Assembly: GCF_902713615.1 (NCBI RefSeq)
Contig: NC_052158.1
Coordinates: forward strand, 35,009,990-35,073,989
Reading direction: 5' to 3'
Length of the DNA stretch: 64,000 nucleotides
DNA from: Scyliorhinus canicula
Taxonomy: Eukaryota
Part shown: piece after piece, positions 841 to 26,700 of the stretch
How positions within the stretch are numbered: position 1 is the first letter of the stretch
Layout: each line of letters begins with the position of its first letter
Made by a program: the position numbers and the translations under genes
Notes under the pieces: generated by a model
Database searches by the model: none
Told to the model about the DNA's origin: nothing
Seen by the model: only the letters and a program-made list of their open reading frames with translations

Positions 841-1179
841 TCCCATTTACAGTGAAAGGGCCAGACTCCCTCACTGTGGCCCACTTGGGTGAGGATGTGG
901 TCCTCAGCTGTTTGGTGGTCCCCTTCACGCAGGACATGAAGCTGTGGGTCGAATGGAAGGATCTGGACACCAGAGCCACGATCCTGATGTGCGAGAGCGA
1001 TCGGACAGAGCCGTGCCAGGCCCTCGGGGGCAGAGCCCACCTCTTCGTGGGTCAGCCGGCGGCTGGAAACGTGTCAATCGGACTACGAGGGGTGAAGGAA
1101 TCTGACACTGGGACGTATCGGTGCACTGTCAGCTCCGATGGCCAGTCCAGCCACGTGGATATGGAGCTCACCGTTGTCG
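841..1179 (+). CDS. Butyrophilin-like gene, IgV exon copy 1 (113 codons, phase 1-1)
   Basis: Acceptor tttcccttccag, donor G|gtaag. Peptide FTVKGP...GEDVVLSC...W...GNVSI.L..V..SD.G.Y.C shows V-set and BTN/B7 motifs, with no stop. Confidence 0.92.
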
Positions 1180-1304
1180 GTAAGATGGTTGGTGTTAACT
1201 GTGGTGTGCCTGACCCTTACCCTAACCTCCCCCCCCCCCACCGCAATCAGTAACGATCGCCGAGTATTCTGCCGTCCTCGCCCCCGGCAACGACGAAAAT
1301 CAAA

Positions 1305-1481
1305 ATGAAATGAAAATGGCTTATTGTGACAAGCAGGCTTCAAGTGAAGTTACTGTGAAACGCCCATAGTCGCCACATTCCGGCGCCTGTTCCGGGAGGC
1401 TGGTACGGGAATTGAACTGTCCTGCTGGCCTATCTTGGTCTGTATTCAAAGCCAGCGATTTAGCCCTGTGCTAAACCAGCC
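1305..1481 (-). mobile_element. Short SINE-like element (copies at ~4625-4802, ~6815-6988, ~8220-8392)
   Basis: Minus-strand head ggggctggtttagcacag. It shares the 'gtcgccacattccggcgcctgttc...ttttcacagtaac' tail block with SINEs at ~17700 and ~47010. Confidence 0.65.
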
Positions 1482-2123
1482 CATCTCCATAATAAATAAA
1501 TCAATCCTTGAATATACATTACGCACCGGCGAGAAAAAGGAATATACTCTGACCCACTGGATACTTGAACCCCCAAGGATCTGCTCCCCCATCTCCTTCA
1601 TAAACACTGCCAATACCTCAAGACCCCCGCTCTCTTACTGGTCCACCCAATCCCCGCACATTCCATGTTACCATTCGGACTCTCTTCCCACCTCTCCCTC
1701 CTATCAGCCATGCCCACTCCATGGGGCATACCTAACCAGCCCCCCCGGCCCCCACCAACAACCTTCTAGGCCCACTGTTCTCCCAAAATGGCCCCTCCCA
1801 CCACCTGGCTCCCGCTCATTAGCCACCTTAAGTTTGCCAGCAAAGTGGCCCCACCAGAGCCCCTTCCCCCCGCCCCACGTACCGAACACAAAGACCATCA
1901 AAGAAACCACTCCCCACACAGCTCTTTTAAACAATCAAACATACTAAACACCACCCCAAGGGGAATAAAACCCGACCCGTTATCCCAACATCCCCAACCC
2001 AACCCCTCCCAACCACAACATAAGAAATTAAAGTTCAATCTCAGTTCAGTCCTTCAGCATTTACGATTGCCTGAGCCTTCACCGCCATCTCAAATAAATG
2101 TCCTTCGGTTTGAGGAAATGACG

Positions 2124-2313
2124 ATGTGGAGAAGCCGACGTTGATCTAGGGTGGGCACAGTAAGAAACCTTACAACACCAGGATAAGTCCAACAGGTTTG
2201 TTTTGAATCACTAGCTTTCGGAGCACAGCTCCTTCATCAGGTGATGTGCTCCGAAAGCTAGTGATTCGAAACAAATCTGTTGGACTTTAACCTGCTGTTG
2301 CAAGACTTCTTAC
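2124..2313 (-). mobile_element. Penelope-like remnant with inverted arm (unit 2)
   Basis: Same hairpin as 1-162, plus the terminal atgtggagaagccgacgttgatctagggtgggcacag. Confidence 0.7.
2207..2245 (-). ncRNA. Minimal hammerhead ribozyme motif (unit 2)
   Basis: Identical to 56-94. Confidence 0.75.
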
Positions 2314-2613
2314 GATGGCAATGGGATATAGGCCGGGCCATCAGGTTGTGGTTTTCACAATTCAGCTCATGACCCACGGCACAGTATCTCATTATATGGC
2401 TCCGTGTCATAATTTTTTGATTTATGACAGTTTGAATTGCCTTGGCATGGTTTACTCTGCTAAAGGTACTACAGAAAGGAAAGTGGTTGTTACTGATATA
2501 TACAGGATCTTCAGGGACCAAAGGACAAGGTCATAATAGGTAAAACCTTGCTTCGGAACACAACGGGATACTATTAATTTTGATCACTGCGAGTCCCTTA
2601 GTTTTGTAATTAT

Positions 2614-2845
2614 TATTTTTTTTTTTTTAATAAATTTAGATTACCCAATTATTTTTTCAATTAAGGGGCAATTTAGCGTGGCCAATCCACCTACTCTGCA
2701 CATCTTTGGGTTGTGGGGGTGAAACCCACGCAGACACGGGGAGAATGTGCAAACTCCACACGGACAGTGACCCAGAGCCGGGATCGAACCTGAGACCTCA
2801 GCGCCGTGAGGCAGTTGTGCTAACCACTAGGCCACCGTGCTGCCC
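2614..2845 (-). mobile_element. tRNA-derived SINE with A-rich tail and 15-bp target-site duplication
   Basis: Head gggcagcacggtggcctagtgg with A box, B box ggttcgatccc. TSD tagttttgtaattat at 2599-2613 and 2846-2860. Absent from units 1 and 3. Confidence 0.92.
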
Positions 2846-3234
2846 TAGTTTTGTAATTATAATGTCTCCTTATCACGGTGTGTGAGAGTCCTCAAGGAAG
2901 AGGGGGAAGCACTGTTGTTCCTGTGACTCCCTTTGGAAGCTCCCAGGACCTAGGGTCAATATTGGGCATTGTGTGACCTGTAGCAGCCATCTTTTAGTTT
3001 CAGAAAAGATTTCATCCTCACCCTGGAGATTGTAGCAACTCCTGAAGGCAACTCAATTCCACCTGCCCAAGGGCAAATTGTGAGGGGTAATACATTGACA
3101 AGAATTTGTCTGTTGTGTTTGCGGCAGTGACTTTAAATCAAAAGGACAAATGTTTGATCGAGTGAACACTGGGACCCCCTGAGGTGACGAAAGACACAAT
3201 GCCAAAGTAAATTTGTTATTTCTTTCCCTTCCAG

Positions 3235-3573
3235 TCCCATTTACAGTGAAAGGGCCAGACTCCCTCACTGTGGCCCACTTGGGTGAGGATGTGGTCCTCA
3301 GCTGTTTAGTGGTCCCCTTCACGCAGGACAGGAAGCTGTGGGTCGAATGGAAGGATCTGGACAACAAAGCCACGATCCTGACGTGCGAGAGCGATCGGAC
3401 AGAGCCGTGCCAGGCCCTCGGGGGCAGAGCCCACCTCTTCGTGGGTCAGCCGGCGGCTGGAAACGTGTCGATCGGACTACGAGGGGTGAAGAAATCTGAC
3501 GCTGGGACGTATCGGTGCACCGTCAGCTCGGATGGCCAGTCCAGCCACGTGGATATGGAGCTCGCCGTTGTCG
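3235..3573 (+). CDS. Butyrophilin-like gene, IgV exon copy 2
   Basis: Intact ag/gt, 339 nt, open frame. 11 nt differences from copy 1 (7 nonsynonymous, 4 synonymous by hand count). Confidence 0.9.
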
Positions 3574-3622
3574 GTAAGATGGTTGGTGTTAACTGTGGTG
3601 TGCCTGACCCTTACCCTAAACG

Positions 3623-3657
<35 letters not shown>

Positions 3658-5478
3658 ACCCAAAATCAGTGGCCAAGCATGCCAGCTCTAACTCAGTGGG
3701 TAGGCACTATCCCCTGAGATAGGAAGGTTACTGTTTTGTGTCCCACACTGGGCCGGTTAGTCAGTCAGTGCTGGGGAAACGAGAACATAGAATGTTGGGA
3801 AAAGCTTTGGGGGTTAGTAACACCTGTACGGGGTGAAAACAGAACTAATGTTTCCCGTCTGTCCTTAAACTCCACAGGTCCTGCCAGAACGGCTGAGATT
3901 TCCCTGGCTTTTCCTGTTTTTGTTTCAGATTCCAGCACCCGCAGTGCTTTGCTTATGTTAATGTTCTGGGAGGGGACACAGGTTCGATTCCCACCTCGTC
4001 AGCTGGTGGAAGTTAAATTTGAAAATTAATGACTTGAATGCTGGTTCAGCTGACGCTATCCGCTCTGCAATTCTTTTTTTTTAATATTTTAATTTGTTTT
4101 TTAACATTTCACACATAAAACAAAACACCCCCAACAAAAAGTATAGCAAAAGAATTCCTCCTTCTACCAACCACCCATATAGCTCAAACCACCCATCCCA
4201 AACCCCCCTCCCCCAAACCTACACCCCTCAGCAATTGACGGGAACCAACTCTTTAAAGTGAAGCATAAGTAGGCCCCATCTCTGATGGAACCCCTCAGTC
4301 ACTCCTTCTCAATATGCAGTAAGTCCATCAGGTTCCCCAGCCACACTGAGGCACAGGACCTCCACCCCAACAGGGCCCACCTTCAGCACCTCCTAAACCA
4401 CTGACAGCGCGACCTCCCCATTTGTATTGAACCTCACATAATCATCATTCACCTTTGCCACCCTAACACCAAAACACGGATCCGCGAGCAACCCCACATC
4501 CAACCTCCACACTGGCCTTTGTGCAGGCCCGTTCCCCAAGACCACATCCGCCTAGTGCGGAGCATGATCTGAAATAACGATCGCTGAGTATTCCGCCGTC
4601 CTCGCCCCCGACAACGATGAAAATGGAAATGAAAATCGCTTAGTGTCACAAGCAGTCTTCAAGTGAAGTTACTGTGAAACGCCCCTAGTCGCCACATTCC
4701 GGCGCCTGTTCCGGGAGGCTGGTATGGGAATTGAACTGTCCTGCTGGCCTGCCTTGGTCTGCTTTCAAAGCCAGCGATTTAGCCCTGTGCTAAACCAGCC
4801 CCTCTCCATAATAAATAAATCAATCCTTGAATATACATTACGCACCGGCGAGAAAAAGGAATATACTCTGACCCACTGGATACTTGAACCCCCAAGGATC
4901 TGCTCCCCCATCTCCTTCATAAACACTGCCAATACCTCAAGACCCCAGCTCTCTTACTGGTCAACCCAACCCCCGCACATTCCATGTTACCATTAGGACT
5001 CTCTTCCCACCTCTCCCTCCGATCAGCCATGACCACTCCATGGGGCATACCTAACCCCCCCCCACCAACAACCTTCTGGGCGCACCGTTCTCCCAAAATG
5101 GCCCCCGCCCCACCTGGCTCCCGCTCACTAGCCACCTTAAGTTTGCCAGCAAAGTGGCCCCACCAGAGCCCCCTCCCCCCGTCCCACGTACCGAACACAA
5201 AGACCATCAAAGAAACCACTCCCCACACAGCTCTTCTAAACAATCAAACATACTAAACACCACCCCAAGGGGAATAAAACCCGACCCATTATCCCTACAT
5301 CCCCAAGCCATTATCCCAACATCCCCAAGCCATTATCCCAACATCCCCAACCCAACCCCTTCCCAACCACAACATAAGAAATCAAACTTCAATCTCAGTT
5401 CAGTCCTTCAGCATTTACGATTGCCTGAGCCTTCACCGCCATCTCAAATAAATGTCCTTCGGTTTGATGGAAATGACA

Positions 5479-5668
5479 ATGTGGAGATGCCGACGTTGAT
5501 CTGGGGTGGGCACAGTAAGAAACCTTACAACACCAGGATAAGTCCAACAGGTTTGTTTCGAATCACTAGCTTTCGGAGCACAGCTCCTTCATCAGGTGAT
5601 GTGCTGCGAAAGCTAGTGATTCAAAACAAACCTGTTGGACTTTAACCTGCTGTTGCAAGACTTCTTAC
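5479..5668 (-). mobile_element. Penelope-like remnant with inverted arm (unit 3)
   Basis: Same as units 1 and 2. Confidence 0.7.
5562..5600 (-). ncRNA. Minimal hammerhead ribozyme motif (unit 3)
   Basis: Identical to 56-94. Confidence 0.75.
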
Positions 5669-6347
5669 GATGGCAATGGGATATAGTCCGGGCCATCAGG
5701 TTGTGGTTTTTCACAATTCAGCTCATGACCCACGGCACAGTATCTCATTATATGGCTCCGTGTCATAATTTTTTGATTTATGACACTGGTTTGAATTGCC
5801 TTGGCATGGTTTACTCTGCTAAAGGTACAATAGAAAGGAAAGTGGTTGTTACTGATATATACAGGATCCTCAGGAACCAAAGGACAAGGTCATAATAGGT
5901 AAAACCTTGCGTCGGAACACAACGGGATATTATTAATTTTGATCGCTGCGAGTCCCTTAGTTTTGTAATTATAATGTCTCCTTATCACGGTGTGTGAGAG
6001 TCCTCAAGGAAGAGGGGGAAGCTCTGTTGTTCCTGTGACTCGCGTTGGAAGCTCCCAGGACGGAGGGTCAATATTGGGCATTGTGTGACCTGTAGCAGCC
6101 ATCTTTTAGTTTCAGAAAAGATTTCACCCTCACCCTGGAGATTGTAGCAACTCCTGAAGGCAACTCAATTCCACCTGCCCAAGGGCAAATTGTGAGGGGT
6201 AATATATTGAAAAACTATTTGGCTGTTGTGTTTGCGGCAGTGACCTTAATTCAAAAGGACAAATGTTTGATCGAGTGAACACTGGGACCCCCTGAGGCAA
6301 CGAAAGACACAATGCCAAAGTAAATTTGTTATTTCTTTCCCTTCCAG

Positions 6348-6686
6348 TCCCATTTACAGTGAAAGGGCCAGACTCCCTCACTGTGGCCCACATGGGTGAG
6401 GATGTGGTCCTCAGCTGTTTGGTGGTCCCCTTCACGCAGGACATGAAGCTGTGGGTCGAATGGAAGGATCTGGACACCAGAGCCACGATCCTGATGTGCG
6501 AGAGCGATCGGACAGAGCCTTGCCAAGCCCTCGGGGGCAGAGCCCACCTCTTCGTGGGTCAGCCGGCGGCTGGAAATGTGTCGATCGGACTACGAGGGGT
6601 GAAGGAATCGGACGCTGGGACGTATCGGTGCACTGTCAGCTCCGTTGGCCAGTTCAGCCACGTGGATATGGAACTCGCCGTTGTCG
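6348..6686 (+). CDS. Butyrophilin-like gene, IgV exon copy 3
   Basis: Intact ag/gt, 339 nt, open frame. 11 nt differences from copy 1 (5 nonsynonymous, 6 synonymous by hand count). Confidence 0.9.
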
Positions 6687-7669
6687 GTAAGATGGTTGGT
6701 GTTAACTGTGGTGTGCCTGACCCTTACCCTAAAACCCCCCCCACCCGCAATCAGTAACGATCGCTGAGTATTCCGCCGTCCTCGCCCCCGGCAACGACGA
6801 AAATCAAAATGAAATGAAAATCGCTTATTGTCACAAGCAGGCTTCAAGTGAAGTTACTGTGAAACGCCCCTAGTCGCCACATTCCGGCGCCTGTTCGGGG
6901 AGGCTGGTACGGGAATTGAACTGTCCTGCTGGCCTGCCTTGGTCTGCTTTCAAAGCCAGCGATTTAGCCCTGTGCTAAACCAGCCCCTCTCCATAATAAA
7001 TAAATCAATCCTTGAATATACATTACGCACTGGCGAGAAAAAGGAATATACTCTGACCCACTGGATACTTGAACCCCCAAGGATCTGCTCCCCCATCTCC
7101 TTCATAAACACTGCCAATACCTCAAGACCCCCGCTCTCTTACTGGTTCACCCCAATCCCCGCACATTCCATGTTACCATTCGGACTCTCTTCCCACCTCT
7201 CCCTCCTATCAGCCATGCCCACTCCATGGGGCATACCTAAACGCTCCCCCCCCCACCCAAAATCAGTGGCCAAGCATGCCAGCTCTAAATCAGTGGGTAG
7301 GCACTATCCCCTGAGAAAAGAAGGTTACTGTTTTGTGTCCCACACTGGGCCGGTTAGTCAGTCAGCGCTGGGGAAACGAGAACAGAGAATGTTGGGAAAA
7401 GCTTTGGGGGTTAGTAACACCTGTACGGGGTGAAAACAGAGCTAACGTTTCCCGTCTGTCTTTAAACTCCACAGGTCCTGCCAGAACGGCTGAGATTCCC
7501 CTGGCGTTTCCTGTTTTTGTTTCAGATTCCAGCACCCGCAGTGCTTTGCTTATGTTAATGTTCTGGGAGGGGACACAGGTTCGAATCCCACCTCGTCAGC
7601 TGGTGGAAGTTAAATTTGAAAATTAATGACTTGAATGCTAGTTCAGCTGACGCTATCCGCTCTGCAATT

Positions 7670-10200
7670 CTTTTTTAAAAAAAATATTTTAATTTGTTTT
7701 TTAACATTTCACACATAAAACAAAACACCCCCAACAAAAAGTACAACAAAAGAATTCCTCCTTCTACCAACCACCCATATAGCTCAAACCACCCATCCCA
7801 AACCCCCCTCCCCCAAACCTACACCCCTCAGCAATTGACGGGAACCAACTCTTTAAAGTGAAGGATAAGTAGGCCCCATCTCTGATGGAACCCCTCAGTC
7901 ACACCTTCTCAATATGCAGTAAGTCCATCAGGTTCCCCAGCCACACTGAGGCACAGGACCTCCACCCCAACAGGGCCCACCTTCAGCACCTCCTAAACCA
8001 CTGACAGCGCGACCTCCCCATTTGTATTGAACCTCACATAATCATCATTCACCTTTGCCACCCTAACACCAAAACACGGATCCGCGAGCAACCCCACATC
8101 CAACCTCCACACTGGCCTTTGTGCAGGCCCGTTCCCCAAGACCACATCCGCCAAGTGCGGTGCAAGATCTGAAATAACGATCGCTGAGTATTCCGCCGTC
8201 CTCGCCCCCGACAACGATGAAAATGGCTTATTGTGACAAGCAGGCTTCAAGTGAAGTTACTGTGAAACGCCCCTAGTCGCCACATTCCGGCGCCTGTTCG
8301 AGGAGGCTGGTACGGGAATTGAACTGTGCTGCTGGCCTGCCTTGGTCTGTATTCAAAGCCAGCGATTTAGCCCTGTGCTAATCCAGCCCCTCCCCATAAT
8401 AAATAAATCAATCCTTGAATATACATTACGCACCGGCGAGAAAAAGGAATATACTCTGACCCACTGGATACTTGAACCCCCAAGGATCTGCTCCCCCATC
8501 TCCTTCATAAACGCTGCCAATACCTCAAGACCCCCGCTCTCTTACTGTCCACCCAATCCCCGCACATTCCATGTTACCATTCGGACTCTCTTCCCATCTC
8601 TCCCTCCTATCAGCCATGACCACTCCATGGGGCATACCTAACCCCCCCTCCCCCCGACCGACAACCTTCTAGGCCCACCGTTCTCCCAAAATGGCCCCCC
8701 GCCCCACCTCACAAATAGGACCAGGCCCTGCCCCAAGTCACTGTCAACCATCTACCCCTCCCCCCCACCCCCAATCCCAGAAATCCCCCAACCACTTCCT
8801 CTCGAAACTGCATACGCCCCGTCCCCCCCCACCAGTCACACCTCCCAGGCCCGCAGAAACCTGTCAACACAGTCTGGGCTGACCGCAGCCCCTCCCCCCA
8901 CCTGGCTCCCGCTCACTAGCCACCTTACGTTTGCCAGCGAAGTGGCCCCACCAGGGCCCCCTCCCCCCCACCCCACGTACCGAACACAAAGACCATCAAA
9001 GAAACCACTCCCCACACAGCTCTCCTAAACAATCAAACATACTAAACACCACCCCAAGGGGAATAAAACCCGACCCATTATCCCAACATCCCCAACCCAA
9101 CCCCTTCCCAACCACAACATAAGAAATCAAACTTCAATCTCAGTTCAGTCCCAGTCCTTCAGCTTTTACGATTGCCTGAGCCTTCTCCGCCATCTCAAAT
9201 AAATGTACTTCGAGTTGTAGGTAACTCTCTGCTTTGCTGGGTAGACCATCCAGAATTGAACATGACTCTTATACAGCACTGCCTTCGCTCTATTAAAGGC
9301 CGCCCACCGTTTTGCCAGCTCCACCGTGATGTCCTGGTATATACGAATACCACTGCCTTCCCTCACCTCTCGATTCTGCTTGGCACATCCCAAGACGTTC
9401 TCCTTCATCTGATAGCTGTGATCTGATAGGTGTGATCTGATAGCTGTGAAAACAGACTGTCACAGTTCTTGGTGGATCATTCATTTGGCTTCGGCCAGGG
9501 TGACCGATGAGCTCTATCCAGCTCAAAGAGGGAGGTGTTCTCCTTCTCCTCCCTCAATAACTTGGCAAACATCCCTGAAAAGTCTGCCTCAGGCCCTCCA
9601 GCCCCTCAGGCAGCCCCACAGTCCAACAATTCTGCCGCCGTGACCTGTTTTCCAGGTCCTCCACTTTGGCTCTCTCTCAGCGCTTTACTGCCCTCCACCT
9701 TCCGCAGCTCCTCTCCCATCGAGGAGAGCTGGTCACTGTGTCACGACGATGCCTCCTCTACCCCCTTCATCCCCTCACCATGCTCCCATACCATTCCCGA
9801 CGTCTTTACAAGAGCCTCCTTTATCGGGGCCAGCGTATCCTCCACCAGCTCTTTGAGCGTTCCCATCATCTCCATCTCATGTCGCTCCAAATACTTGGCA
9901 AACTGCCGCTCAAACTCCGCCGCCATCACCTCGGGTAGCGTGTCCACCGCAATGGGCACAACCCCACCCGGCGAGCTTGCTCCCAACATCTTTTCTCCCA
10001 CAGAACTCCGAACCAAACTCAGACCCCCAGGTGGACTAGCGCTCGTTCCTCTTCATGCCGTATTCTTTCATCGCGATTTCAACATCCTCTAATTCCCACA
10101 ACTTTACTGATGGCATCTTATTAGGGTTCCCCCTAAAACTAGATACAAGGGGTCAAAAAATGGGAACATTTGTGGGAGCCACCCTGCGACCTCCACCTGC
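7670..10200 (-). mobile_element. Internally deleted L1/Tx1-clade LINE (ORF1 remnants, pieces of ORF2, 3' tail)
   Basis: Minus ORFs 9741-10016 and 9166-9408 (GIRIYQDITVELAKR...KAVLYK...YPAK) resemble L1 ORF1. T-rich tail on the + strand at ~7670. Partial copies occur in units 1 and 2. Confidence 0.75.
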
Positions 10201-11361: not shown

Positions 11362-11646
11362 CCTTCGGGACAAAGCCAGGTTTGTCGATAACGCAGTCCG
11401 ACGAGAACGTCGTCGCTTACGCTTGCCAGTCTGAGGGTTGGTACCCCGAACCTGGCATCACCTGGAAAGACGGCTTCGGAAACAGCCTGGTGCCACTGTC
11501 CACAATAACCAAAGTGAGAGACGAGCAGGGACTGTACAATGTGGACATCCAGTATCGGACAACTGATAGCGTTTCATCCACTGTGATCTGTATCATCTAC
11601 AACAAACTGGGCAATGTCAAGGAGATGTCGACTGCACATGTAATAG
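11362..11646 (+). CDS. Butyrophilin-like gene, IgC exon (95 codons, phase 1-1)
   Basis: Acceptor ttcttttctag, donor G|gtcagt. YACQSEGWYPEPGITW...GLYNV...VICII matches the BTN/B7 C-domain pattern and is in frame with any V exon. Confidence 0.92.
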
Positions 11647-11729
11647 GTCAGTGATTGCAACATTCAAAGCTTAACAGTAGTTTTTTTTTTAAATGTTAAG
11701 TTATTAAAAATAATAATTACATGTGAAAT

Positions 11730-12235
11730 GGGGGCAGAATGATGTCATTCAGCCCCTCGGATCTCCATCGCCATTCAGTAAGATCACAGCTGATCTATTG
11801 GTATTTCAAGCTCCACATTCCCATCTACCTCTCAATAACCTTTGATTCCTTTCTACAATCGGAATCTATCTTCCTCCACCTTAAAATTATTCAGTGACTC
11901 CGCCTCCGCCTCCACCTCCTTCTGAGGCAGAGTTCTAAAATCGCACAATTCTCCGAGAGAACAAAAATCTCTTCATCTCTGTCCTAAAAGAGTGACCCCC
12001 CTCATTTTAAAATAGTGCCCCCCTGATTCCGGACTCACCCACTAAGTGGAACATTCCTTTCCATGCCCACCTTGCGGAGACTGGTCAGTATCATATACAC
12101 TTCAATCAAGTCACCCCCTCACTTTTCTAAACTCCAGTGGAACAAGCCCAGTCTGTCCAACCTTTCCTCCTAAGACAACTGCTGATTCCAGGTATCAGTC
12201 TAGTAAACCTCCTCTGAACTGCCTCCAATGCATGT
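11730..12235 (-). mobile_element. CR1-like LINE 3' fragment
   Basis: Reverse complement resembles the CR1 3' region at 13612-14225 and 52000-52550. Confidence 0.6.
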
Positions 12236-12359
12236 AAATCACATGTAAATTGTCTGTTCCTGAAGTGAGGAGATGTGTTGGCTGTGTTTCAGGCCCTGCA
12301 TCAGCATTGAGCACAAACAGGTCAAATATAATATGACCTTAAATACTGTTACACAAATT

Positions 12360-12606
12360 GCCCCATCAAACACGCCCAGGACAGGTACAGCTCGGGGTTA
12401 GATACAGAGTAAAGCTCCCTCTATATGTCACTATCAAACATTCCCAGGACTGGTACAGCAGGGGGTTAGATACAGAGTAAAGCTCCTTCTACACCATCCT
12501 GCTCGGGGTTATATACAGAGTCAGGCTCCCCCTACACTGGCTCCATCAAACACTCCCAGGACAGGTACAGCTCGGGGTTATGTACAGAGTCAGGCTCCCT
12601 CTACAC
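12360..12606 (+). repeat. Degenerate tandem repeat with ~65-bp unit
   Basis: Recurring cccaggacaggtacagctcggggttagatacagagtaaagctcc. Confidence 0.8.
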
Positions 12607-12945
12607 CAGGGGTGGGCAAACTTTTCCGTGCAAGGGCCACATTCAGAAATTCACAATTTTAAAGGGCCGCATAGTATATTAAGTAAAATAATTACTTAAC
12701 CCGGTTATGATTCTGGGCGCCTCATATAGGACATAGAACAGTACAGCACAGAACAGGCCCTTCGGCCCTCGACGTTGTGCCGAGCAATGATCACCCTACT
12801 CAAGTCAACGTATCCACCCTATACCAGTAAGTAACCCAACAGCCCCCCCCATTAACCTTAAAAAAAAATAATAAAAAATTAAAAAAAAAAAAAAAATTTT
12901 TTTTTTTTTTAATGACTTGGTGGGCCGCATAAAGACCTTTGGCGG
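12607..12945. mobile_element. Truncated hAT-like MITE with a nested retroposon tail
   Basis: One TIR-like end, caggggtgggcaaactt. The matching end was not found. Confidence 0.5.
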
Positions 12946-13611
12946 ACGGCAGATTGTTTTAAAACCCCATCTGGATCTCTAATGTCCCCTGAAAAGCCGA
13001 GAAATCTGCCGTCCTTACCTGGTGAGGCCTACTTGGTGACTCTGGGCAAACAGCAATGAACAGAAGGACAATGCAGCAGCACATAGGAAAACTGCCACCT
13101 GGAAGTTCCCCTCCAAGCCACTCACCATCCTGACCGTTCCGTCACTGTGGCTGGGTCAATATCGTCTAACTCCCTCCCTAACAGCACAGTGGGTGTACAT
13201 CACATGGACCGCAGCACCACCACCTTCTCAAGGGGCAATTAGGGATGGGCTTAGCCAGTGACGCCCACGTTCCTGCAAATTAATTTTTTTCAAAGTGGCT
13301 CACTCTTAATTACCCTCCGAAAAGGCTCCATGAGACACCCAGTTTGTCAAACCACTACAAGGCCTATTCGCTGGGTACCAATGTGGCAAATGTTATTGTG
13401 GAGCAAAAAAATTAGCTAGCACGCTCCCGATTTCGACCTTTGCCTGCTCATGGGTTGGCAACGCAAATTGCTACCTGTCCTATTCCGTATCAACAGTGAA
13501 TGTTGAGTTATCGACCTTTGTGTGAGGCGTGGAAGCCCACGTCCATTAGGTTCCGTGGGTGACTGGGATGTGTTGCTGCGCCCCTGGAGGTGACTGAAAG
13601 AATAGCAGCTG

Positions 13612-14225
13612 CTTCATTCCCCTTGAGTACAAGAGTCAGCAGGTCATGTTACAGTTGATATGACTTTGGTTAGGCCACATTTGGAATACTGCTTGCAGTT
13701 CTGGTCGCCACATTACCAGAACGATGTGGATGCTTTAGAGAGGGTGCAGAGGAGGTTCACCAGGACGTTGCCTGGTATGGAGGGTGCTAGCTATGAAGAA
13801 AGGTTGAGTAGATTAGGATTGTTTTTGTTGGAAAGACGGAGGTTGAGGGGGGACCTGATTGTGGTCTACAAAATTATGAGAGGTATGGACAGGGTGGATA
13901 GCAACAAGCTTTTACCAAGAGTGGGGGTGTCAGTTACAAGGGGTCACGATTTCAAGGTGAGAGGGGGAAAGTTTAAGGGAGATGTGCATGGGAAGTTTTT
14001 TTACACAGAGGGTGGTGGGTGCCTGGAACGCTTTGCCAGCGGAGGTGGTAGAGCCGGGCACGATAGCATCATTTAAGATGCATCTAGACAGATATATGAA
14101 CGGGCGGGGAACAGAGGGAAGTAGATCCTTGGAAAATAGGCGACAGGTTTAGATAAAGGATCTGGATCGGCGCAGGCTGGGAGGGCCGAAGGGCCTGTTC
14201 CTGTGCTGTAATTTTCTTTGTTCTT
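13612..14225 (+). mobile_element. CR1 LINE 3' fragment
   Basis: ORF LVRPHLEYCLQFWSPHY...LERVQRRFTR...RGDLI is the CR1 ORF2 C-terminus. Tail ends (gttctt)n. Confidence 0.9.
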
Positions 14226-14324
14226 GTTCTTTGTTTGCCAGAGGGGTGCGGGGGCCTCAAGGCATCAACATCACCGGAGGCTTGGCAAAAGGAGCTTATT
14301 AATTCTCTCTTTAAACGTTTTCAG

Positions 14325-14363
14325 ATTTTCTTCCGCACGCTCAGTTTCGTGTGAGTGAGGCCG
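14325..14363 (+). CDS. Butyrophilin-like gene, 39-nt exon (DFLPHAQFRVSEA, phase 1-1)
   Basis: Acceptor ttttcag, donor G|gtaaga; preserves the frame between IgC and the 27-nt exon. Confidence 0.7.
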
Positions 14364-14465
14364 GTAAGATTTGTTTTCGTCCCCTGATTTAAAAAAAAAC
14401 TCTGTCTTTGTGTTCACCAGCCTCAATATTGACCCTTGGCCACTGTCACATATTTTCTTTTGCAG

Positions 14466-14492
14466 AATGGAGTAGAATTCGCAGTTTCCAGG
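14466..14492 (+). CDS. Butyrophilin-like gene, 27-nt pre-B30.2 exon (EWSRIRSFQ)
   Basis: Acceptor ttttcttttgcag, donor G|gtaagc. A 27-nt phase 1-1 'EW...' exon immediately before B30.2 is typical of BTN genes. Confidence 0.85.
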
Positions 14493-15031
14493 GTAAGCGG
14501 ACAGTGCAGGAACGGAGTGAGGTACTGGGGAGGTTTTGCTGTGAGTTCCCAACACACACACACACTGCTCGGGTGAAGAAAACTGGCCAGGCCTCAAAGG
14601 AGCAGGGCAAATGGTAGCAAAGTGGTCATATTACTGGACTAGCGAGTCAGAGGCCTAGACTAATGACCTACAGACATGAGTTCATGACTAAATGAAGGAA
14701 AAACTCAGCTGCGACGCCTCCGTAAGTTGAAGAGTCTCCTAACGTTCGCTGTCCGAACTCTCATGCGGCTGACCGAAGGGGAGAGTCCAGCTTAACCGGT
14801 CTGCACAGCGGAGAAAGCGAGGGTAGCTATCAGAGAACCAATTGGAAATGCGTTTCCAAAGAATGTAATTCTGCAATAACTACCGAAGTATGTACAAGTC
14901 TACCTCGTAGACCTGTGGCTCTGGTGTTGGCCTCCAAGGCCAGATGCCAAATTGTAAATTATGCTTCAATTGTACAAAGCCTTGGGCAGACCCCACCTGG
15001 GGAACTAGATTCAGTTTTAGGAACGGTATAT

Positions 15032-15250
15032 ATTTAAAAAAATTTAGAGTACCCAATTCATTTTTTCCATTTAAGGGGCAATTTAGCATGGCAAATCCAC
15101 CTAGCCTGTGCATCTTTGGGTTGTGGGAGCGAAACAACAAGGGGAGAATGTGCAAACTCCGCACGAACAGTGACCCGGAGCCGGGATCGAATCTGGGACC
15201 TCGGTGCCGTGAGGCGGCAGTTCTATCCACTGTGCCACCGTGCTGTCTTA
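15032..15250 (-). mobile_element. tRNA-SINE, short A-tailed type
   Basis: Same family as 2614-2845. Similar copies at ~18420-18645, 32412-32635, 36885-37108 and 41003-41190. Confidence 0.8.
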
Positions 15251-15839
15251 GGGAGGGTATATTGACGCAGGTTCACCAGAAAGGTGGCAGGGTGAAAAGG
15301 GTTCAATGATGAGGACAGGCTGCAGGAACATCTGTTCCCCCGACTTCAGAATGCTGAGATGTGACCTCCATAGAATCCCTACGGTGCGCAAGGAGGCCAT
15401 TCGCCCCATCAATTCTGCACCAACCCAACTGGAAGAGCACCCTACCTAGGCCGACTCCAGTGCCCTATTCCCAAAACCCCACCTAACCTGCACATCTTTG
15501 GACTGTGGGAGGAAATCAGAGCACCCGGAGGAAACCCACACAGACACGGGGAGAAAGTGCAAACTCCACACAGTCCCCCAAGGTTGGAATTGAACCCGGG
15601 TCCCTAGCGCATTGAGCAACAGTGTCGAGAGGATTCGAGTGGAAGGATAGTTTGCAACAATTTGCTCGGGTGGACAAGTTAAGAACAAAGGGCGATTGAG
15701 TTAAAACATTGATTTGGGATGTTCAGGAGGGAAATCGGGAAGCGCATTAGCTCACAAGAGGAGAGCAGAAATCTATAAATTGTTTCCTCAAAATGCTGTG
15801 GACGCTAGATTTGGGGGGGGGGGGGGTGGGGGGAGAAAC

Positions 15840-16540
15840 ATAGAAACTGGGAAAAAGAGTGGGCCATTCTGCCCTTTGGACCTGCTCTGCTGTTCATTAT
15901 GATCGTGGCTGATCCTCCATCTCAAAGCCATATTTACGCTTTCTCCCCATAACCCTTGATGCCGTTAAAATTTAAACAAAATCGATCTCTTTCTTGAACA
16001 CTTTCAGTGTTTTGGCCTGCACAGCCTCTAGTGATAGAGAATTCCACAGGTTCACCATCCTCTGAGTGAAGAAATGTCTCCTCATCTCAGTCCTGAATAG
16101 TCTATCCTGTATCCTGAGACTGTCCCCTGGTTCTAGATTTCCCCAATCAGGAAAAACATCCTCCCTGCATCTAGTCTGTCCAGACCAGTTAGAATTTTAG
16201 ACGTTTCAATCAGATCTCCTCTCCTCCTTCTGAACTCCGGTGAATAGAGGCCCATTCGAACCAATCTCTCCTCATAGGACAGTCACGCCAACCCCGGTAT
16301 CAGCCTAGTGAACCTCCGCTGCACTCCCTCTGTGGCAAATACATTCTTTCTGAGGTGGGAGACCATAACTGCACGAAATACTCCAGGTATGGTCTCACCA
16401 AGGCCCTGTATAACTTCAGTAAGATATCCCTAATTCTGAACTCAAATCCTCTCGCAATGAAGGCCGCCATACCATTTACCTTACTAATTGCTTGCTGCAC
16501 CTGCCTCTCCACTTTCATTGACTGGTGTACAAGGGAACAG
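15840..16540 (-). mobile_element. CR1 LINE 3' fragment
   Basis: Minus ORF LLKLYRALVRPYLEYFVQLWSP. Confidence 0.85.
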
Positions 16541-16645
16541 TTGAAGTTTTAAAGACTATTCATCGATAGATTTCTTTCCTGAATTGGAGTTAAATTAATT
16601 GTTTGTTTATCTCTCTCTCCCCCCCCCCCTCTCTTTCCATTTCAG

Positions 16646-17258
16646 TTTCTTTGACTCTGGATCCAGACACAGCGAATCCTTGGCTCATCCTGTCAGACGG
16701 GGGCACCAGCGTGTCGGACAGTAACGAGCGGCAGCATCTCCCTGAAATCCCAAGAGGTTCCTGGTCAGTCACTGTGTGCTGGCCTCTGGGGGCTTTGCCG
16801 CAGGCAAGCACTACTGGGAGACGGAGGTGGGCCATAAGGACACCTGGGACCTGGGCCTGGCCAGCGAGACGGTCAGTAGGAAGGGCAAGGTCAAAGGGGT
16901 GCCCGGGGCTGGGCACTGGAGCCTGAGCCTCAGCAAGACGGAGTACCAGGCTGTGGACTCGCCACCCCGGGCCTTGCCGCTGGGTCAGAACCCGACAGTG
17001 GTTGGCGTTTACCTCAACTACGAGCGGGGACAGGTGTCCTTCTTCGACGCGGGGGGCCAGCTGCACCTGTATACCTTCGCTGTCAACTTCACCAAGAGGC
17101 TGTATCCCTTCTTCTGCCCGGGATTACACAACTGGCAGAAGAACGCTGAACCCCTCCATCTTCGCAACCGCAAGCCATTGAGAATGGAACCAGGGTGGAT
17201 GTTGTGGAATGATGCAAGGTTGAGTGGAGGGGGGTCACATGCGGGAGTGCGAGCCTGA
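16646..17258 (+). CDS. Butyrophilin-like gene, terminal B30.2 (PRY-SPRY) exon with a 1-bp frameshift at 16745-16747
   Basis: Acceptor ccatttcag. VSLTLDPDTANPWL...LPE in one frame, VLASGGFAAGKHYWETEVG...VGVYLNYERGQVSFFD...LYPFFCPG in the next. One extra A restores LPENPKRFLVSHCVLASG and the correct length. Confidence 0.88.
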
Positions 17259-22814: not shown

Positions 22815-23003
22815 TTACAGTTTGAGGCTGCACAGTCGCAGGCCCTCGGCATTGCCCGGGCAGCTGGTTAAGTACGGACTGAAATAGGGGAAGAGTCTCT
22901 CTGTGAAGGTGTCTTTGAAGCTGTAGATATGGGTCATGTTGTCAGCGTTATAGAAGGACACCTGGCCTCCCTCGAAATCCAGGTAGATCCCCACCTTACT
23001 GGG
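22815..23003 (-). pseudogene. Orphan SPRY C-terminal fragment (B30.2 pseudo-exon)
   Basis: Hand translation: [62 protein letters not shown]. In-frame TGA two codons upstream (23007-23009) and CR1 sequence beyond ~23060. Confidence 0.85.
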
Positions 23004-23736
23004 GGTTCAGAGGAGACTGGGTGATTTACCGAAATGGAGCCCAAACCCCAGAGCCCCGATATGCACAGGAACGCAGATCAGTTAGGGAGAGGTTGGATAG
23101 ACTGGGGTTGCTTTCCTGAGACCAGAGGCGGCGAAGGGATGACCGAATCGGGGTGTAGAAAATTATGAGGGGCCTAGACAGGGCAGACAGGAAAGACCTA
23201 TTTCCCCGAGCTGACTGTTCAATGACCAGGGGAATGAAGAAATGTGATTGGCAGAAGGAATGAGACGGGTCCCAAGATAAAATATTTTCATCTCGTGGAG
23301 GAAGGTAGGGCAGCGAGGGTGGGTGGGCCGGGCGGAGAAGGTGGGGCGGCAAAGGGGGGGGGGGGGAGTGGGGTAGCGAGGGGGGGGAGTCGGGTAGCGA
23401 GGGGGGGGGGGGGGGGGGAGGAGATAGGGCGGAGGGGGGGTCGTGAGTGGTGTAGGTGGGGGTGTCTTGTAGGCCTGGCCACAGAGGATGTAGGCCTGGT
23501 GGTGGGTGTATGGGGGAAGGCTCATAGGCCGGCGGGGGCGGTAAGTGGTGCAGGCCGGGGCGGGGTGGGGTTGGGATGTCCCTCTCGGGAGGTGGGGGAG
23601 ACGAGGGTAAATCATTTGGAGTTTCGCCAGGGGAAACGGTGCCCTGGATTTCACGTCATATTTGAAGATAAGGATGTTTCCTATTAACCCAAAAAGGACA
23701 GATAGTGGCCTCTATTTAAGGTCAGTCCTGCCCATG

Positions 23737-26700
23737 TGACAGTGCAGCATTCCCTCAGTACTGACCCTCTGACAGTGCAGCACTCCCTCAGTACTGACCC
23801 TCTGACAGTGCAGCACTCCCTCAGTACTGACCGTCTGACAGTGCAGCACTCCCTCAGAACTGACCCTTTGACAGTGCAGCACTCCCTCAGTACTGACCCT
23901 CTGACAGTGCAGCACTCCCTCAGTACTGACCCTCTGACAGTGCAGCCCTCCCTCAGTACTGACCCTCTGACAGTGCAGCACTCCCTCAGTACTGACTCTC
24001 TGACAGTGCAGCACTCCCTAAGTACTGACCCTCTGACAGTGCAGCACTCCCTCAGTACTAACCCTCTGACAGTGCAGCATACCCTCAGTACTGACCCTCT
24101 GTCTGTGCAGCACTCCCTCAGTACTGACCTTCTGACAATGCAGCACTCCCTCAGTACTGACCCTCTGACAGTGCAGCACTCCCTCAGTACTGACCCTCTG
24201 ACAGTGCAGCACTCCCTCAGTACTGACCCTCTGACAGTGCAGTACCCTCAGTACTGACCCTCTGACAGTGCAGCATTCCCTCAGTACTGATCCTCTGACT
24301 GTGCAGCACTCCCTCAGTACTGCCCCTCTGACAGTGCAGCCCTCCCTCAGTGCTGACCCTCTGACAGTGCAGCACTCCCTCAGTACTGACCCTCTGACAG
24401 TGCAACACTCCCTCAGTACTCACCCTCTGACAGTGCAGCATTCCCTCAGTACTCACCCTCTGACAGTGCAGCACTCCCTCAGTACTGTCTCTCTGACAGT
24501 GCAGCATTCCCTCAGTACTGACCGTCTGGCAGTGCAGCATACCCTCAGTACTGACCCTCTGTCAGTGCAGCACTCCCTCAGTACTGACCTGCTGACAATG
24601 CAGCACTCCCTCAGTACTGACCCTCTGACAGTGCAGCACTCCCTCAGTACTGACCCCCTGACAGTGCAGCACTCCCTCAGGTCTGACCCTCTGACAGTGC
24701 AGCACTCCCTCAGTTCTGACCCACTGACAGTGCAGCACTCCCTCAGTACTGACCCTCTGACAGTGCAGCACTCCCTCAGTACTGACCCTCCGACAGTGCA
24801 GCACTCCCTCAGTACTGACCCTCTGACAGTGCAGCACTCCCTCAGTACTGACTCTCTGACAGTGCAGCACACACTCAGCACTGACCGTCTGGCAGTGCAG
24901 CCCTCCCTCAGTACTGACCCTCTGTCAGTGCAGCACTCCCTCAGTACTGACCTTCTGACAATGCTGCAGTCCCTCAGTACTGACCCTCTGACAGTGCAGC
25001 ACTCCCTCAGTACTGACCCTCTGACAGTGCAGCACTCCCTCAGTACTGACCCTCTGACAGTGCAGCACTTCCTCAGTACTGACCCTCTGACAGTGCAGCA
25101 TTCCCTCAGTACTGATCCTCTGACAGTGCAGCACTCCCTCAGTACTGACCCTCTGACAGTGCAGCACTCCCTCAGTACTGACCCTCTGACAGAGCAGCAC
25201 TCCCTCAGTACTGACCCTCTGACAGTGCAGCACTCCCTCAGTACTGACCCTCTGACAGCGCAGCACTCCCTCAGTACTGACCCTCTGACAGTGCAGCACT
25301 CCCTCAGTACTGACCCTCTGACAGTGCAGCACTCCCTCAGTACTGACTCTCTGACAGTGCAGCACTCCCTCAGTACTGACCCTCTGACAGTGCAGCACTC
25401 CCTCAGTACTGACCCTCTGACAGTGCAGCATTCCCTCAGTACTAACCCTCTGACAGTGCAGCACTCCCTCAGTACTGACCCTCTGACAGTGCAGCACTCC
25501 CTCAGTACTGACCCTCTGACAGTGCAGCACTCCCTCAGTACTGACCTTCTGACAATGCAGCACTCCCTCAGTACTGACTCTCTGACAGTGCAGCACTCCC
25601 TCAGTACTGACCCTCTGACAGTGCAGCACTCCCTCCCTCAGTACTGACCCTCTGACATTGCAGCACACCCTCAGTGCTGACCCTCTGACAGTGCAGTACT
25701 CCCTCAGTACTGACCCTCTGACAGTGCAGCATTCCCCCAGTACTGACCCTCTGACAGTGCAGCGCTCCCTTAGTACTGACCCTCTGACAGTGCAGCACTC
25801 CCTCAGTACTGACTCTCTGACAGTGCAGCACTCCCTCAGTACTGACCCTTTGACAGTGCAGCACTCCCTCAGTACTGAATCTCTGACAGTGCAGCACTCC
25901 TTCAGTACTGACCCTCTGACATTGCAGCACTCCCTCAGTACTGACCCTCTGACAGTACAGCACTCCCTCAGTACTGACCCTCTGACAGTGCAGCAGTCCC
26001 CCTGTACTGACCTTCTGACAGTGCAGCACTCCCTCAGTACTGACCCTTTGACAGTGCAGCACTCCCTCAGTACTGTCCCTCTGACAGTGAAGCACTCCCT
26101 CAGTACTGACCCTCTGACAGTGCAACACCCTCAGTACTGACCCTCTGACAGTGCAGCACTCCCTTAGTACTGGCTCCCTGACAGTGCAGCGCTCCCTCAG
26201 GACTGACCCTCTGACAGTGCAACACCCTCAGTACTGACTCTCTGACAGTGCAGCGCTCCCTCAGTACTGACCTTCTGACAGTGCAGCACTCCCTCATACT
26301 GACACTGTGACAGTGCAGCACTCCCTCAGTTCTGACCCTCTGACAGTGCAACACTCCCTCAGTACTCACCCTCTGACAGTGCAGCATTCCCTCAGTACTC
26401 ACCCTCTGACAGTGCAGCACTCCCTCAGTCCTGTCTCTCTGACAGTGCGGCACTCCCTCAGTACTGACTCTCTGACAGTGCAGCACACAGCACTGACCCT
26501 CTGGCAGTGCAGCATACCCTCAGTACTGACCCTCTGACAGTGCAGCACTCCCTCAGTACTGCCCCACTGACAGTGCAGCAGTCCCTCAGTACTGACCTTC
26601 TGACAGTGCAGCAACCTCAGTACTGACTCTCTGACCTTGCAGCACTCCCTCAGTACTAACCCTCTGACAGTGCAGCGCTCCCTCGGTACTGACCTTCTGA

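What the first reader, a model, noticed from the sequence alone, without database searches (positions are those of the whole stretch)
11362..17258. Butyrophilin-like gene with no transmembrane exon: predicted soluble IgV-IgC-B30.2
Seen: IgC, the 39-nt exon (DFLPHAQFRVSEA), the 27-nt exon (EWSRIRSFQ) and B30.2 (VSLTLDPDTAN) all join in phase 1. Introns 11647-14324 and 14364-14465 hold repeats and short unique stretches in which I found no hydrophobic, splice-flanked segment on hand translation. Established: BTN/BTNL proteins are type I membrane proteins with cytosolic B30.2. Inference: with a leader, this protein would be secreted with B30.2 outside the cell (the B30.2 has an NFT sequon), a topology reminiscent of secreted PRY-SPRY proteins such as ohanin. 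It could be a decoy or a soluble pattern-recognition protein.
Basis: partly seen in the sequence, partly recalled or inferred. Interest (0 to 1): 0.8.

Follow-up and report, generated by a model that had tools for sequence, protein, structure and literature searches.

The report
Shark butyrophilin with outward-facing B30.2
This catshark butyrophilin-family gene really has no membrane-spanning exon between its immunoglobulin domains and its B30.2 domain, as in 16 other sharks and rays, so B30.2 should face outside the cell; a membrane-type exon does exist at the gene's 5' end, and the B30.2 exon carries a one-base frame break that is probably an assembly error.

Summary
The exons and phase-1 joins are as described. 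No splice-compatible hydrophobic exon lies between IgC (11362-11646) and the B30.2 exon (16646-17258).

1. The B30.2 exon is split over two frames by a 1-nt deletion at 16745-16748. RefSeq patches it (XP_038673049.1, "LOW QUALITY PROTEIN: hemicentin-1-like"). No run from 10 studies holds the assembly's words across that site, although they hold most of the exon. It is probably an assembly error.
2. The N-terminus lies upstream of the window and is not a plain leader. It has about 86 conserved residues with two hydrophobic segments, and the first carries the signature of the butyrophilin transmembrane exon.
3. The architecture is not a catshark oddity. Gene models from 17 elasmobranch species share the N-terminus, IgV, IgC and the first linker exon. 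The 14 that extend to a B30.2 join it to IgC through a 22-23 residue, non-hydrophobic linker.

Ig domains and B30.2 must therefore lie on the same, extracytosolic side. Whether the product is released or tethered by the N-terminal hairpin is unresolved.

The scan noted a near-identical second copy (s1-262423) just beyond this window. I found no paper on this architecture. All evidence comes from gene models; read laying failed.

The parts
841..1179 (+). IgV cassette exon. It is the 2nd of 4 in the RefSeq model; the 1st lies upstream of the window.
   Evidence: 339 nt, phase 1-1, canonical splice sites, intact frame. Pfam V-set 2e-10. Corresponds to residues 200-312 of P0001.
3235..3573 (+). 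IgV cassette exon (3rd of 4).
   Evidence: It differs from the first in-window copy at 11 nt and sits in a tandem unit that is 95-98% identical.
6348..6686 (+). IgV cassette exon (4th of 4).
11362..11646 (+). IgC exon of butyrophilin type.
   Evidence: Pfam PF22705 C2-set_3 6e-18. 100% match to residues 540-633 of XP_038673049.1. 89.5% identical to S. torazame.
14325..14363 (+). 39-nt micro-exon (DFLPHAQFRVSEA).
   Evidence: Canonical sites, phase 1-1. Conserved in all shark and ray orthologues. It starts with the DF(F/L)P motif that opens the transmembrane exon of classical butyrophilins.
14466..14492 (+). 27-nt micro-exon (EWSRIRSFQ).
   Evidence: Canonical sites, phase 1-1. Conserved in orthologues. 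It resembles the last exon before B30.2 in fish butyrophilins. The RefSeq model instead uses a donor 48 nt further on, adding 16 residues that no orthologue has.
16646..17258 (+). B30.2 (PRY-SPRY) terminal coding exon. PRY is in the frame starting at 16648, SPRY in the frame starting at 16746, and the stop is at 17256-17258.
   Evidence: Pfam PRY 3e-13 and SPRY 1e-21, in two different frames. The best solved relatives are BTN3A3, BTN3A1 and BTN2A1 at about 1e-58. The part after the break is 92% identical to S. torazame.
16745..16748 (+). 1-nt deletion (frameshift) in the assembly. Orthologues read LPENP(K/E)RF here.
   Evidence: Alignment to the intact paralogous exon at 39430-38912(-) puts a 1-nt gap here. 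S. torazame and the second catshark copy read through. RefSeq drops 2 nt to bridge the break. 4 of the 6 sampled words of 16700-16792 are absent from all 23 runs of 10 studies.
13623..14224 (.). Dispersed LINE-like repeat in the IgC-39 intron. Its tail produces the only hydrophobic, splice-flanked ORF in that intron (14176-14232), which is a false candidate.
   Evidence: The region recurs within the window. The tail motif recurs at 52511. The donors are GTTTGC and GTTTTC.

Best explanation
The window holds the 3' two-thirds of one of two tandem catshark copies of an elasmobranch-specific butyrophilin-family gene.

Shown:
- The product joins IgV (four cassette exons in this copy) and IgC to a PRY-SPRY/B30.2 domain through a conserved 22-residue linker encoded by two micro-exons.
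- There is no membrane-spanning segment between them.
- The only hydrophobic segments lie in a conserved N-terminal stretch of about 86 residues, encoded upstream of the window.

Inferred:
- Segment 1 is a decayed copy of the butyrophilin transmembrane exon, moved in front of the leader. It keeps the motif L-[YF]-P-x-G-V-S-x-W, then a helix, then W..R-K-R-R.
- Segment 2 is the old leader.
- With each segment keeping its native orientation, the basic loop is cytosolic and everything after segment 2 (Ig domains and B30.2) is extracytosolic.
- The mature protein is then either released, if segment 2 is cleaved, or held by the two-helix hairpin. I put this at about even odds.
- B30.2 would act as an extracellular ligand-binding module linked to a B7/butyrophilin-type Ig ectodomain. 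The product would be a bridging or decoy recognition protein rather than an inside-out sensor like BTN3A1.
- The 1-nt frame break at 16745-16748 is most likely an assembly error or a private allele.
For: - Exons, phases and domains.
- The window's own product and its N-terminus.
- Gene models from 17 elasmobranch species share the N-terminus, IgV, IgC and the first linker exon. The 14 that reach a B30.2 have a 22-23 residue IgC-to-B30.2 gap with maximum hydropathy below 0. By contrast, 93 of 107 other butyrophilin homologues have a transmembrane-grade segment there, in a gap of median 73 residues.
- No hidden transmembrane exon.
- The linker aligns with the stretch just before B30.2 in BTN3A3.
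- The transmembrane-exon motif sits in front of segment 1 in all 13 members with an N-terminus. The same motif precedes the transmembrane segment in 72 of 258 other butyrophilins, against 0.47 matches expected in shuffled sequences.
- A Mobula isoform skips exactly segment 1 (36 residues), so it is an exon of its own.
- The loop has 5-6 basic residues against one before segment 1.
- Frameshift: no run from 10 studies holds the words across it. Runs X1-X4 hold 58 of 62 words of the exon, a shortfall equal in number to the four words missing from every run.
- The SPRY part after the break is open for 170 codons and 92% identical to S. torazame.
- Neighbouring TRIM genes are the same in two other sharks.
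Against: - All orthologue evidence comes from predicted gene models. I saw no read-level splice evidence, because read laying failed.
- The run kinds are only guessed to be RNA.
- The second catshark copy also has a frameshift, at another place in its B30.2 exon. Skate and Heptranchias models lack B30.2, and the PRY part is degenerate in Mobula and Hypanus. B30.2 may therefore be dispensable or decaying in some lineages.
- Segments 1 and 2 are only marginally hydrophobic. The summed insertion-energy scale gives about +3.3 and +2.6, against -2.1 for butyrophilin transmembrane segments (scale recalled from memory).
- Homology of segment 1 to the transmembrane exon is not significant by HMM score, and the motif pattern was written after seeing the data.
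- The AlphaFold model was poor (pLDDT 59).
Confidence: 0.55

Rival explanations
1. The copy in the window is a decaying duplicate, that is, a pseudogene or a gene losing its B30.2. On this reading the frameshift is real, the product ends in out-of-frame sequence after the PRY part (stop at about 16923), and the IgV exon amplification is neutral tandem duplication. The family architecture would still hold in other species.
For: - The frame break is in the assembly and RefSeq flags the protein as LOW QUALITY.
- The tandem second copy has its own +1 frameshift and an N-truncated model.
- S. torazame has one IgV exon and the catshark four. The IgV copies differ by about as many nonsynonymous as synonymous codon changes: 7/4, 5/6 and 8/8.
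- B30.2 is absent or degenerate in some batoid models.
Against: - The words spanning the deletion are absent from all 23 runs of 10 studies, although those runs hold 74-94% of the exon's words.
- There are 170 open codons after the break, 92% identical to S. torazame. That is higher than the Ig domains at 87-90%.
- All splice sites are intact.
- Single-base indels are a common kind of long-read assembly error (general knowledge; the sequencing technology of this assembly was not checked here).
Confidence: 0.22
2. The protein is simply secreted and soluble. The second hydrophobic segment is an ordinary cleaved signal peptide, and the stretch before it, including segment 1, is just a long n-region or a removed pre-sequence with no anchoring role.
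For: - Segment 2 has a 13-residue apolar run, like butyrophilin leaders (mean 10) and unlike their transmembrane segments (mean 20).
- It sits 5-7 residues before the first IgV strand, as leaders do.
- Sharks have a V-F-A|S site that fits the -3/-1 rule (rule from general knowledge).
- The Mobula isoform without segment 1 has a normal-looking signal peptide.
- Transmembrane-skipped soluble isoforms are predicted for butyrophilins of other vertebrates.
Against: - Segments 1 and 2 and the first residues (M-[SN]-[AT]-V-G) are conserved between sharks and rays, far more than signal peptides usually are.
- No conserved cleavage site exists in rays or skates.
- No signal-peptide predictor was available.
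Confidence: 0.3
3. This is a classical type I butyrophilin whose transmembrane exon was missed, either hidden in an intron, alternatively spliced, or lost in an assembly gap. B30.2 would then be cytosolic as usual.
For: Every other known butyrophilin with a B30.2 is type I. The IgC-39 intron is 2.7 kb and repeat-rich.
Against: - No compatible hydrophobic ORF was found outside repeats.
- The window contains no N.
- 14 species' models from two different pipelines join the same exons directly.
- With the N-terminal hairpin in place, an added transmembrane segment would be needed to return B30.2 to the cytosol, and none is seen.
Confidence: 0.04

Closest known systems
Butyrophilins BTN3A1/BTN3A3/BTN2A1 and the BTNL proteins (type I IgV-IgC-TM-B30.2)
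   Same: - B7-like IgV, BTN-type IgC (Pfam PF22705) and a PRY-SPRY domain encoded by one large last exon.
- Phase-1 micro-exons before B30.2.
- These are the best solved matches, at E about 1e-58, covering both the ectodomain and B30.2.
   Different: - There is no transmembrane helix between IgC and B30.2. The gap is 22-23 residues against a median of 73.
- A transmembrane-like exon and the leader-like segment both sit at the N-terminus.
- B30.2 is predicted to be extracytosolic, so the inside-out phosphoantigen sensing of BTN3A1 cannot apply.
Predicted transmembrane-skipped isoforms of vertebrate butyrophilins (RefSeq isoforms X2 and higher of turtle, pike and marmoset BTN1A1/2A1/2A2-like genes)
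   Same: IgC is joined to B30.2 without a hydrophobic segment, because all the exons are in phase 1.
   Different: Those are minor predicted isoforms of genes that do have the transmembrane exon in the usual place. Here the layout is constitutive, conserved across elasmobranchs, and combined with a special N-terminus.
Secreted PRY-SPRY proteins: snake-venom vespryn/ohanin and nematode SPRYSEC effectors
   Same: They are a precedent for a B30.2/SPRY fold working outside the producing cell after export through a signal peptide (general knowledge; SPRYSEC review PMC5071358 listed).
   Different: They have no Ig domains and no sequence affinity to this gene. The best matches here are butyrophilins, then TRIM21 and pyrin. 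The comparison is by analogy only.
Long bipartite signal peptides, for example the arenavirus stable signal peptide with two hydrophobic segments
   Same: A long N-terminal pre-sequence with two hydrophobic stretches separated by a basic loop, placed ahead of an exported ectodomain.
   Different: This resemblance is from memory and was not tested. No sequence relationship is claimed.

Membership tests
Butyrophilin / BTNL family | IgV plus BTN-type IgC ectodomain | tested here: met
   Pfam V-set 2e-10 and C2-set_3 (BTN3A2-like Ig-C) 6e-18. Two-stretch matches to BTN3A and BTN2A1 chains.
Butyrophilin / BTNL family | C-terminal PRY-SPRY (B30.2) encoded by one terminal exon | tested here: met
   PRY 3e-13 and SPRY 1e-21 in exon 16646-17258. 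In this assembly the two lie in different frames.
Butyrophilin / BTNL family | Single transmembrane helix between IgC and B30.2 (type I topology, cytosolic B30.2) | tested here: not met
   No hydrophobic exon in the introns. The 22-23 residue gap has maximum hydropathy below 0 in all 13 family proteins scored. 93 of 107 other homologues have a transmembrane segment there.
Butyrophilin / BTNL family | Short N-terminal cleavable leader directly before IgV | tested here: inconclusive
   A leader-like segment 2 is present, but it is preceded by about 55 conserved residues that include segment 1. Cleavage cannot be predicted with these tools.
Butyrophilin / BTNL family | Phase-1 micro-exons encoding the stretch before B30.2 | tested here: met
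   39-nt and 27-nt exons, both phase 1-1. The 27-nt exon resembles the last exon before B30.2 in fish butyrophilins.
Secreted PRY-SPRY proteins (vespryn/ohanin type) | Signal peptide followed by PRY-SPRY alone, with no Ig domains | tested here: not met
   Ig domains are present. No vespryn appears among the best solved or database matches.
TRIM proteins | RING, B-box and coiled coil before PRY-SPRY | tested here: not met
   The precomputed Pfam lists for the orthologues show only Ig and PRY/SPRY families.
Hemicentin (the RefSeq name of this gene) | VWA domain, a long I-set Ig array, and EGF and G2F modules | tested here: not met
   The product is 4 IgV + IgC + B30.2. The name reflects only the repeated Ig domains.
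Pseudogene | A frame disruption that is real (seen in independent reads) and accompanied by relaxed constraint | tested here: inconclusive
   The disruption is present in the assembly. Its words are absent from 23 runs, and the downstream part is 92% conserved.

The most novel reading that the evidence does not exclude
An ancient butyrophilin lineage, found across elasmobranchs, moved its transmembrane exon in front of the leader. This turned a cytosolic B30.2 sensor inside out, so that PRY-SPRY works in the extracellular space, secreted or hairpin-tethered, next to a B7-like Ig ectodomain. It could act, for example, as an extracellular binder of immunoglobulin or of a microbial ligand, analogous to the binding of antibody Fc by TRIM21 inside cells.
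Probability: 0.35. Interest if true: 0.75.

Novelty: new variant of a known kind. Interest (0 to 1): 0.55.

Why it matters
In butyrophilins and TRIM proteins, B30.2 is the textbook intracellular recognition domain. A conserved vertebrate lineage that places it outside the cell, fused to a B7-like ectodomain, would be a new topology for the family.

It would also be a clean example of exon relocation changing protein topology, and a candidate soluble or surface recognition molecule in the oldest jawed vertebrates with adaptive immunity.

It is directly testable by expressing the S. torazame or Mustelus cDNA and asking where B30.2 ends up.

For genome annotation, the catshark entry is misnamed (hemicentin-1-like) and flagged as low quality, probably because of an assembly indel.

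Tried and rejected
No junctions, depth or indel counts were obtained.
- **The look-up of encoding contigs** for the S. torazame and Mustelus orthologues returned gene tables but no DNA. Orthologous introns and dN/dS could not be compared.
- **Search for transcript-derived catshark proteins** with the SPRY ORF found only one 62% relative.
- **AlphaFold2** of the S. torazame protein with an 11-sequence alignment gave pLDDT 59. The Ig domains were good and B30.2 poor. Two N-terminal helices (24-51 and 60-84) appeared at low confidence. The model was not used for fold search.
- **HMM of the segment-1 exon against other butyrophilins.** The top score was 6.5 bits against 7.1 for reversed decoys, so it was not significant. 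Only the motif count supports homology.
- **The two invariant cysteines of the family's B30.2** are not unique to it. 13 of 128 other homologues have both, so this is no evidence for a disulfide.
- **Sturgeon and gar models** that join IgC directly to B30.2 look like draft or fused models and were set aside.
- **Literature.** The supplement of the catshark genome paper is not held. Four literature searches found nothing on this architecture.


Full report
**What is in the sequence**

On the + strand there are four exons with canonical splice sites:
- 11362-11646 (285 nt)
- 14325-14363 (39 nt)
- 14466-14492 (27 nt)
- 16646 to the stop at 17256-17258

All join in phase 1. Pfam assigns the first exon to the BTN3A2-like Ig-C family (6e-18) and the last to PRY (3e-13) plus SPRY (1e-21). 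Three intact IgV exons lie upstream at 841-1179, 3235-3573 and 6348-6686. They sit inside tandem units that are 95-98% identical.

PRY and SPRY are in different frames. The PRY frame runs into out-of-frame sequence, and the SPRY frame is preceded by a TGA. An intact paralogous B30.2 exon on the minus strand (39430-38912) aligns with a single 1-nt gap in the A-run at 16745-16748. Orthologues read LPENP(K/E)RF there. The exon is 613 nt, one short of what phase 1 plus a stop requires.

**Identity of the gene**

An exhaustive profile search with the IgC exon found a 100% match in an 874-residue protein. This is XP_038673049.1, "LOW QUALITY PROTEIN: hemicentin-1-like" of Scyliorhinus canicula. That model contains:
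- 86 N-terminal residues and one IgV that lie upstream of the window
- the three IgV exons in the window
- IgC and the two micro-exons, the second extended through an alternative donor
- the B30.2 exon, with 2 nt dropped to bridge the break

**Is the break real?**

The B30.2 exon is held at 74-94% of 62 sampled words by 20 runs from 9 studies. For a 93-nt stretch centred on the break, all 23 runs from 10 studies hold at most 2 of 6 words, and none holds more. Runs X1-X4 lack only 4 of the 62 words of the exon, the same number that every run lacks around the break. The assembly's sequence across the break is therefore not seen in independent data.

The SPRY part after the break is open for 170 codons and 92% identical to S. 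torazame. IgV is 87-88.5% identical, the N-terminus 88%, IgC 89.5% and the linker 100%. I read the break as an assembly error or a private allele, with a probability of about 0.75.

Three caveats apply. The kinds of the runs are guesses. I could not lay reads. A second catshark copy exists: XP_038671735.1, on the same chromosome, noted by the scan as s1-262423 about 9 kb beyond the window. It is intact at this site but has its own +1 shift after SPPRAL.

**No transmembrane exon between IgC and B30.2**

A hydropathy scan of the introns in three frames gave four weak candidates in the IgC-39 intron, none of them convincing. A second scan looked for AG...GT intervals that are phase 1-1, stop-free and hydrophobic. 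In the IgC-39 intron it left only 14176-14232/14316. That interval lies in the tail of a LINE-like dispersed repeat, and its motif recurs at 52511. Its donors are GTTTGC and GTTTTC. The scan also gave five candidates in the 27-nt-to-B30.2 intron (16067-16177, 16248-16526). They mostly overlap sequence repeated within the window, and I did not examine them further.

Independent of the scans, orthologue models show the same direct join. They come from S. torazame (two pipelines), Mustelus, Cetorhinus, Carcharodon, Heterodontus, Pristiophorus, Hemiscyllium, two Chiloscyllium species, Pristis, Hypanus and two Mobula species. In each, IgC is followed by D-F-L-P-H-x-Q-F-R-V-S-E-A, then E-W-S-R-I-x-S-x-x, then V-S-L-T-L-D-P.

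In all family proteins scored, the gap between IgC and B30.2 is 22-23 residues (40 in the catshark's own RefSeq model, which uses the extended donor), with maximum hydropathy below 0. In 93 of 107 other butyrophilin homologues the gap has a median of 73 residues and contains a transmembrane-grade segment. Most of the 14 exceptions are RefSeq "isoform X2" and higher forms that skip the transmembrane exon.

**The N-terminus is not a plain leader**

All members with a complete 5' end share this layout:
- M-[SN]-[AT]-V-G at the start
- a segment 1 of about 20 residues (V-W-E-A-L-A-V-G-I-I-A-x-S-V-T-S-W-I-A-Y)
- a basic cluster (R-[KQ]-R-R plus more arginines)
- a spacer of about 15 residues
- a segment 2 (E-L-L-L-Q-V-x-I-L-A-G-A-V-F-A-S-Y)
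- IgV, 5-7 residues after segment 2

A Mobula isoform skips exactly 36 residues containing segment 1, so that segment is its own exon. An HMM of this N-terminus hits no other butyrophilin homologue.

Segment 1 is preceded by L-[YF]-P-x-G-V-S-x-W. In classical fish and reptile butyrophilins the transmembrane exon opens with F-F-P-x-V-S-G-W and ends with W-R-R. A loose pattern for this motif occurs in all 13 family N-termini. It also occurs in 72 of 258 other homologues, and 71 of those 76 matches are directly followed by a transmembrane-grade stretch. Shuffled sequences give 0.47 matches. The pattern was written after looking at the data, and an HMM test was not significant, so the homology is likely but not proven.

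On an insertion-energy scale recalled from memory, the 19-residue sums are as follows:

| Segment | Mean sum | Longest apolar run |
|---|---|---|
| Family segment 1 | +3.3 | 17 |
| Family segment 2 | +2.6 | 13 |
| Classical butyrophilin transmembrane segments | -2.1 | 20 |
| Classical butyrophilin leaders | +6.1 | 10 |

Both segments are intermediate. Segment 2 is leader-like in length.

**How it most likely works**

- *Shown:* the Ig domains and B30.2 are contiguous, with no membrane pass between them.
- *From general knowledge:* Ig domains with conserved disulfides and N-x-S/T sequons fold in the ER lumen, and basic flanks stay cytosolic.
- *Inferred:* the N-tail is outside, segment 1 spans the membrane from outside to inside, the basic loop is cytosolic, and segment 2 spans from inside to outside, like a signal sequence. 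IgV, IgC, the linker and B30.2 are then all extracytosolic.

Whether signal peptidase cuts after segment 2 cannot be decided. Sharks have a plausible V-F-A|S site, but rays have none that is conserved. Strong conservation of both segments argues for a retained hairpin. The leader-like length and the lack of any stalk before IgV argue for cleavage.

Either way, B30.2 cannot act as a cytosolic sensor here. The most economical function is an extracellular binding module coupled to a B7/butyrophilin-type ectodomain.

**Comparison with known families**

The closest solved proteins are BTN3A3, BTN3A1 and BTN2A1 (about 1e-58), then BTNL3 and BTNL8, then TRIM21 and pyrin for B30.2 alone. The gene meets the butyrophilin criteria for IgV, IgC, B30.2 and micro-exons, but fails the type I topology criterion. 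Secreted PRY-SPRY proteins such as vespryn and SPRYSEC are functional precedents only. Four literature searches found no description of this architecture. The proteins exist in databases only as automatic predictions under butyrophilin-like, ERMAP-like or hemicentin-like names.

**Limits**

Everything about splicing rests on gene models plus sequence logic. Orthologous DNA could not be fetched. The AlphaFold model was weak.

B30.2 may be under relaxed constraint in some lineages. Skate and Heptranchias models stop after the linker. The PRY part of Mobula and Hypanus is degenerate. Both catshark copies carry single-base frame breaks in the assembly.

**Verdict**

The frame break and the N-terminus were overlooked. 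The topological inference (B30.2 outside) is supported. "Soluble" is open, and "no transmembrane exon" is true only between IgC and B30.2.

Noticed in passing
window 38912-39430 (-): An intact PRY-SPRY exon, 49-55% identical to the one in the finding, probably the last coding exon of a TRIM gene. TRIM genes flank the orthologous gene in S. torazame and Mustelus as well. I used it only as a comparator for the frameshift.
   Followed up: partly
window 22821-23003 (-): An isolated SPRY fragment (61 residues, 48% identical to residues 83-143 of the SPRY ORF, E 1e-14), next to the 33-bp satellite. It is probably an exon remnant.
   Followed up: no
window 1-9100 (+): Tandem units of 2.4-3.3 kb, 95-98% identical, each carrying one intact IgV exon in phase 1-1. 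The copies differ by 11-16 nt, with about equal synonymous and nonsynonymous codon changes. The RefSeq model strings four IgV domains together, whereas S. torazame has one.
   Followed up: partly
window 14493-14540 (+): The RefSeq model reads through the GT donor of the 27-nt exon to a second donor 48 nt further on. This adds 16 residues (GKRTVQERSEVLGRFC) that no orthologue has.
   Followed up: partly
about 9.3 kb beyond the window end (not in window); protein P0275 = XP_038671735.1: A second, near-identical catshark copy of this gene. Its model is N-truncated (366 residues). It is intact at the site where the window copy is broken, but has a +1 frameshift after SPPRAL in its own B30.2 exon.
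   Followed up: partly
window 23722-30981, 31158-32130, 52645-57752: Large satellite arrays with strong strand skew: a 33-bp unit x221, a G-rich 24/48-bp unit, and a 15-bp unit x337.
   Followed up: no
orthologue proteins P0014, P0153, P0165, P0008, P0154: Skate (Leucoraja, Amblyraja) and Heptranchias models end after IgC or the linker, without B30.2. Mobula and Hypanus keep B30.2 but with a degenerate PRY part. This points to lineage-specific loss or relaxation of B30.2.
   Followed up: no
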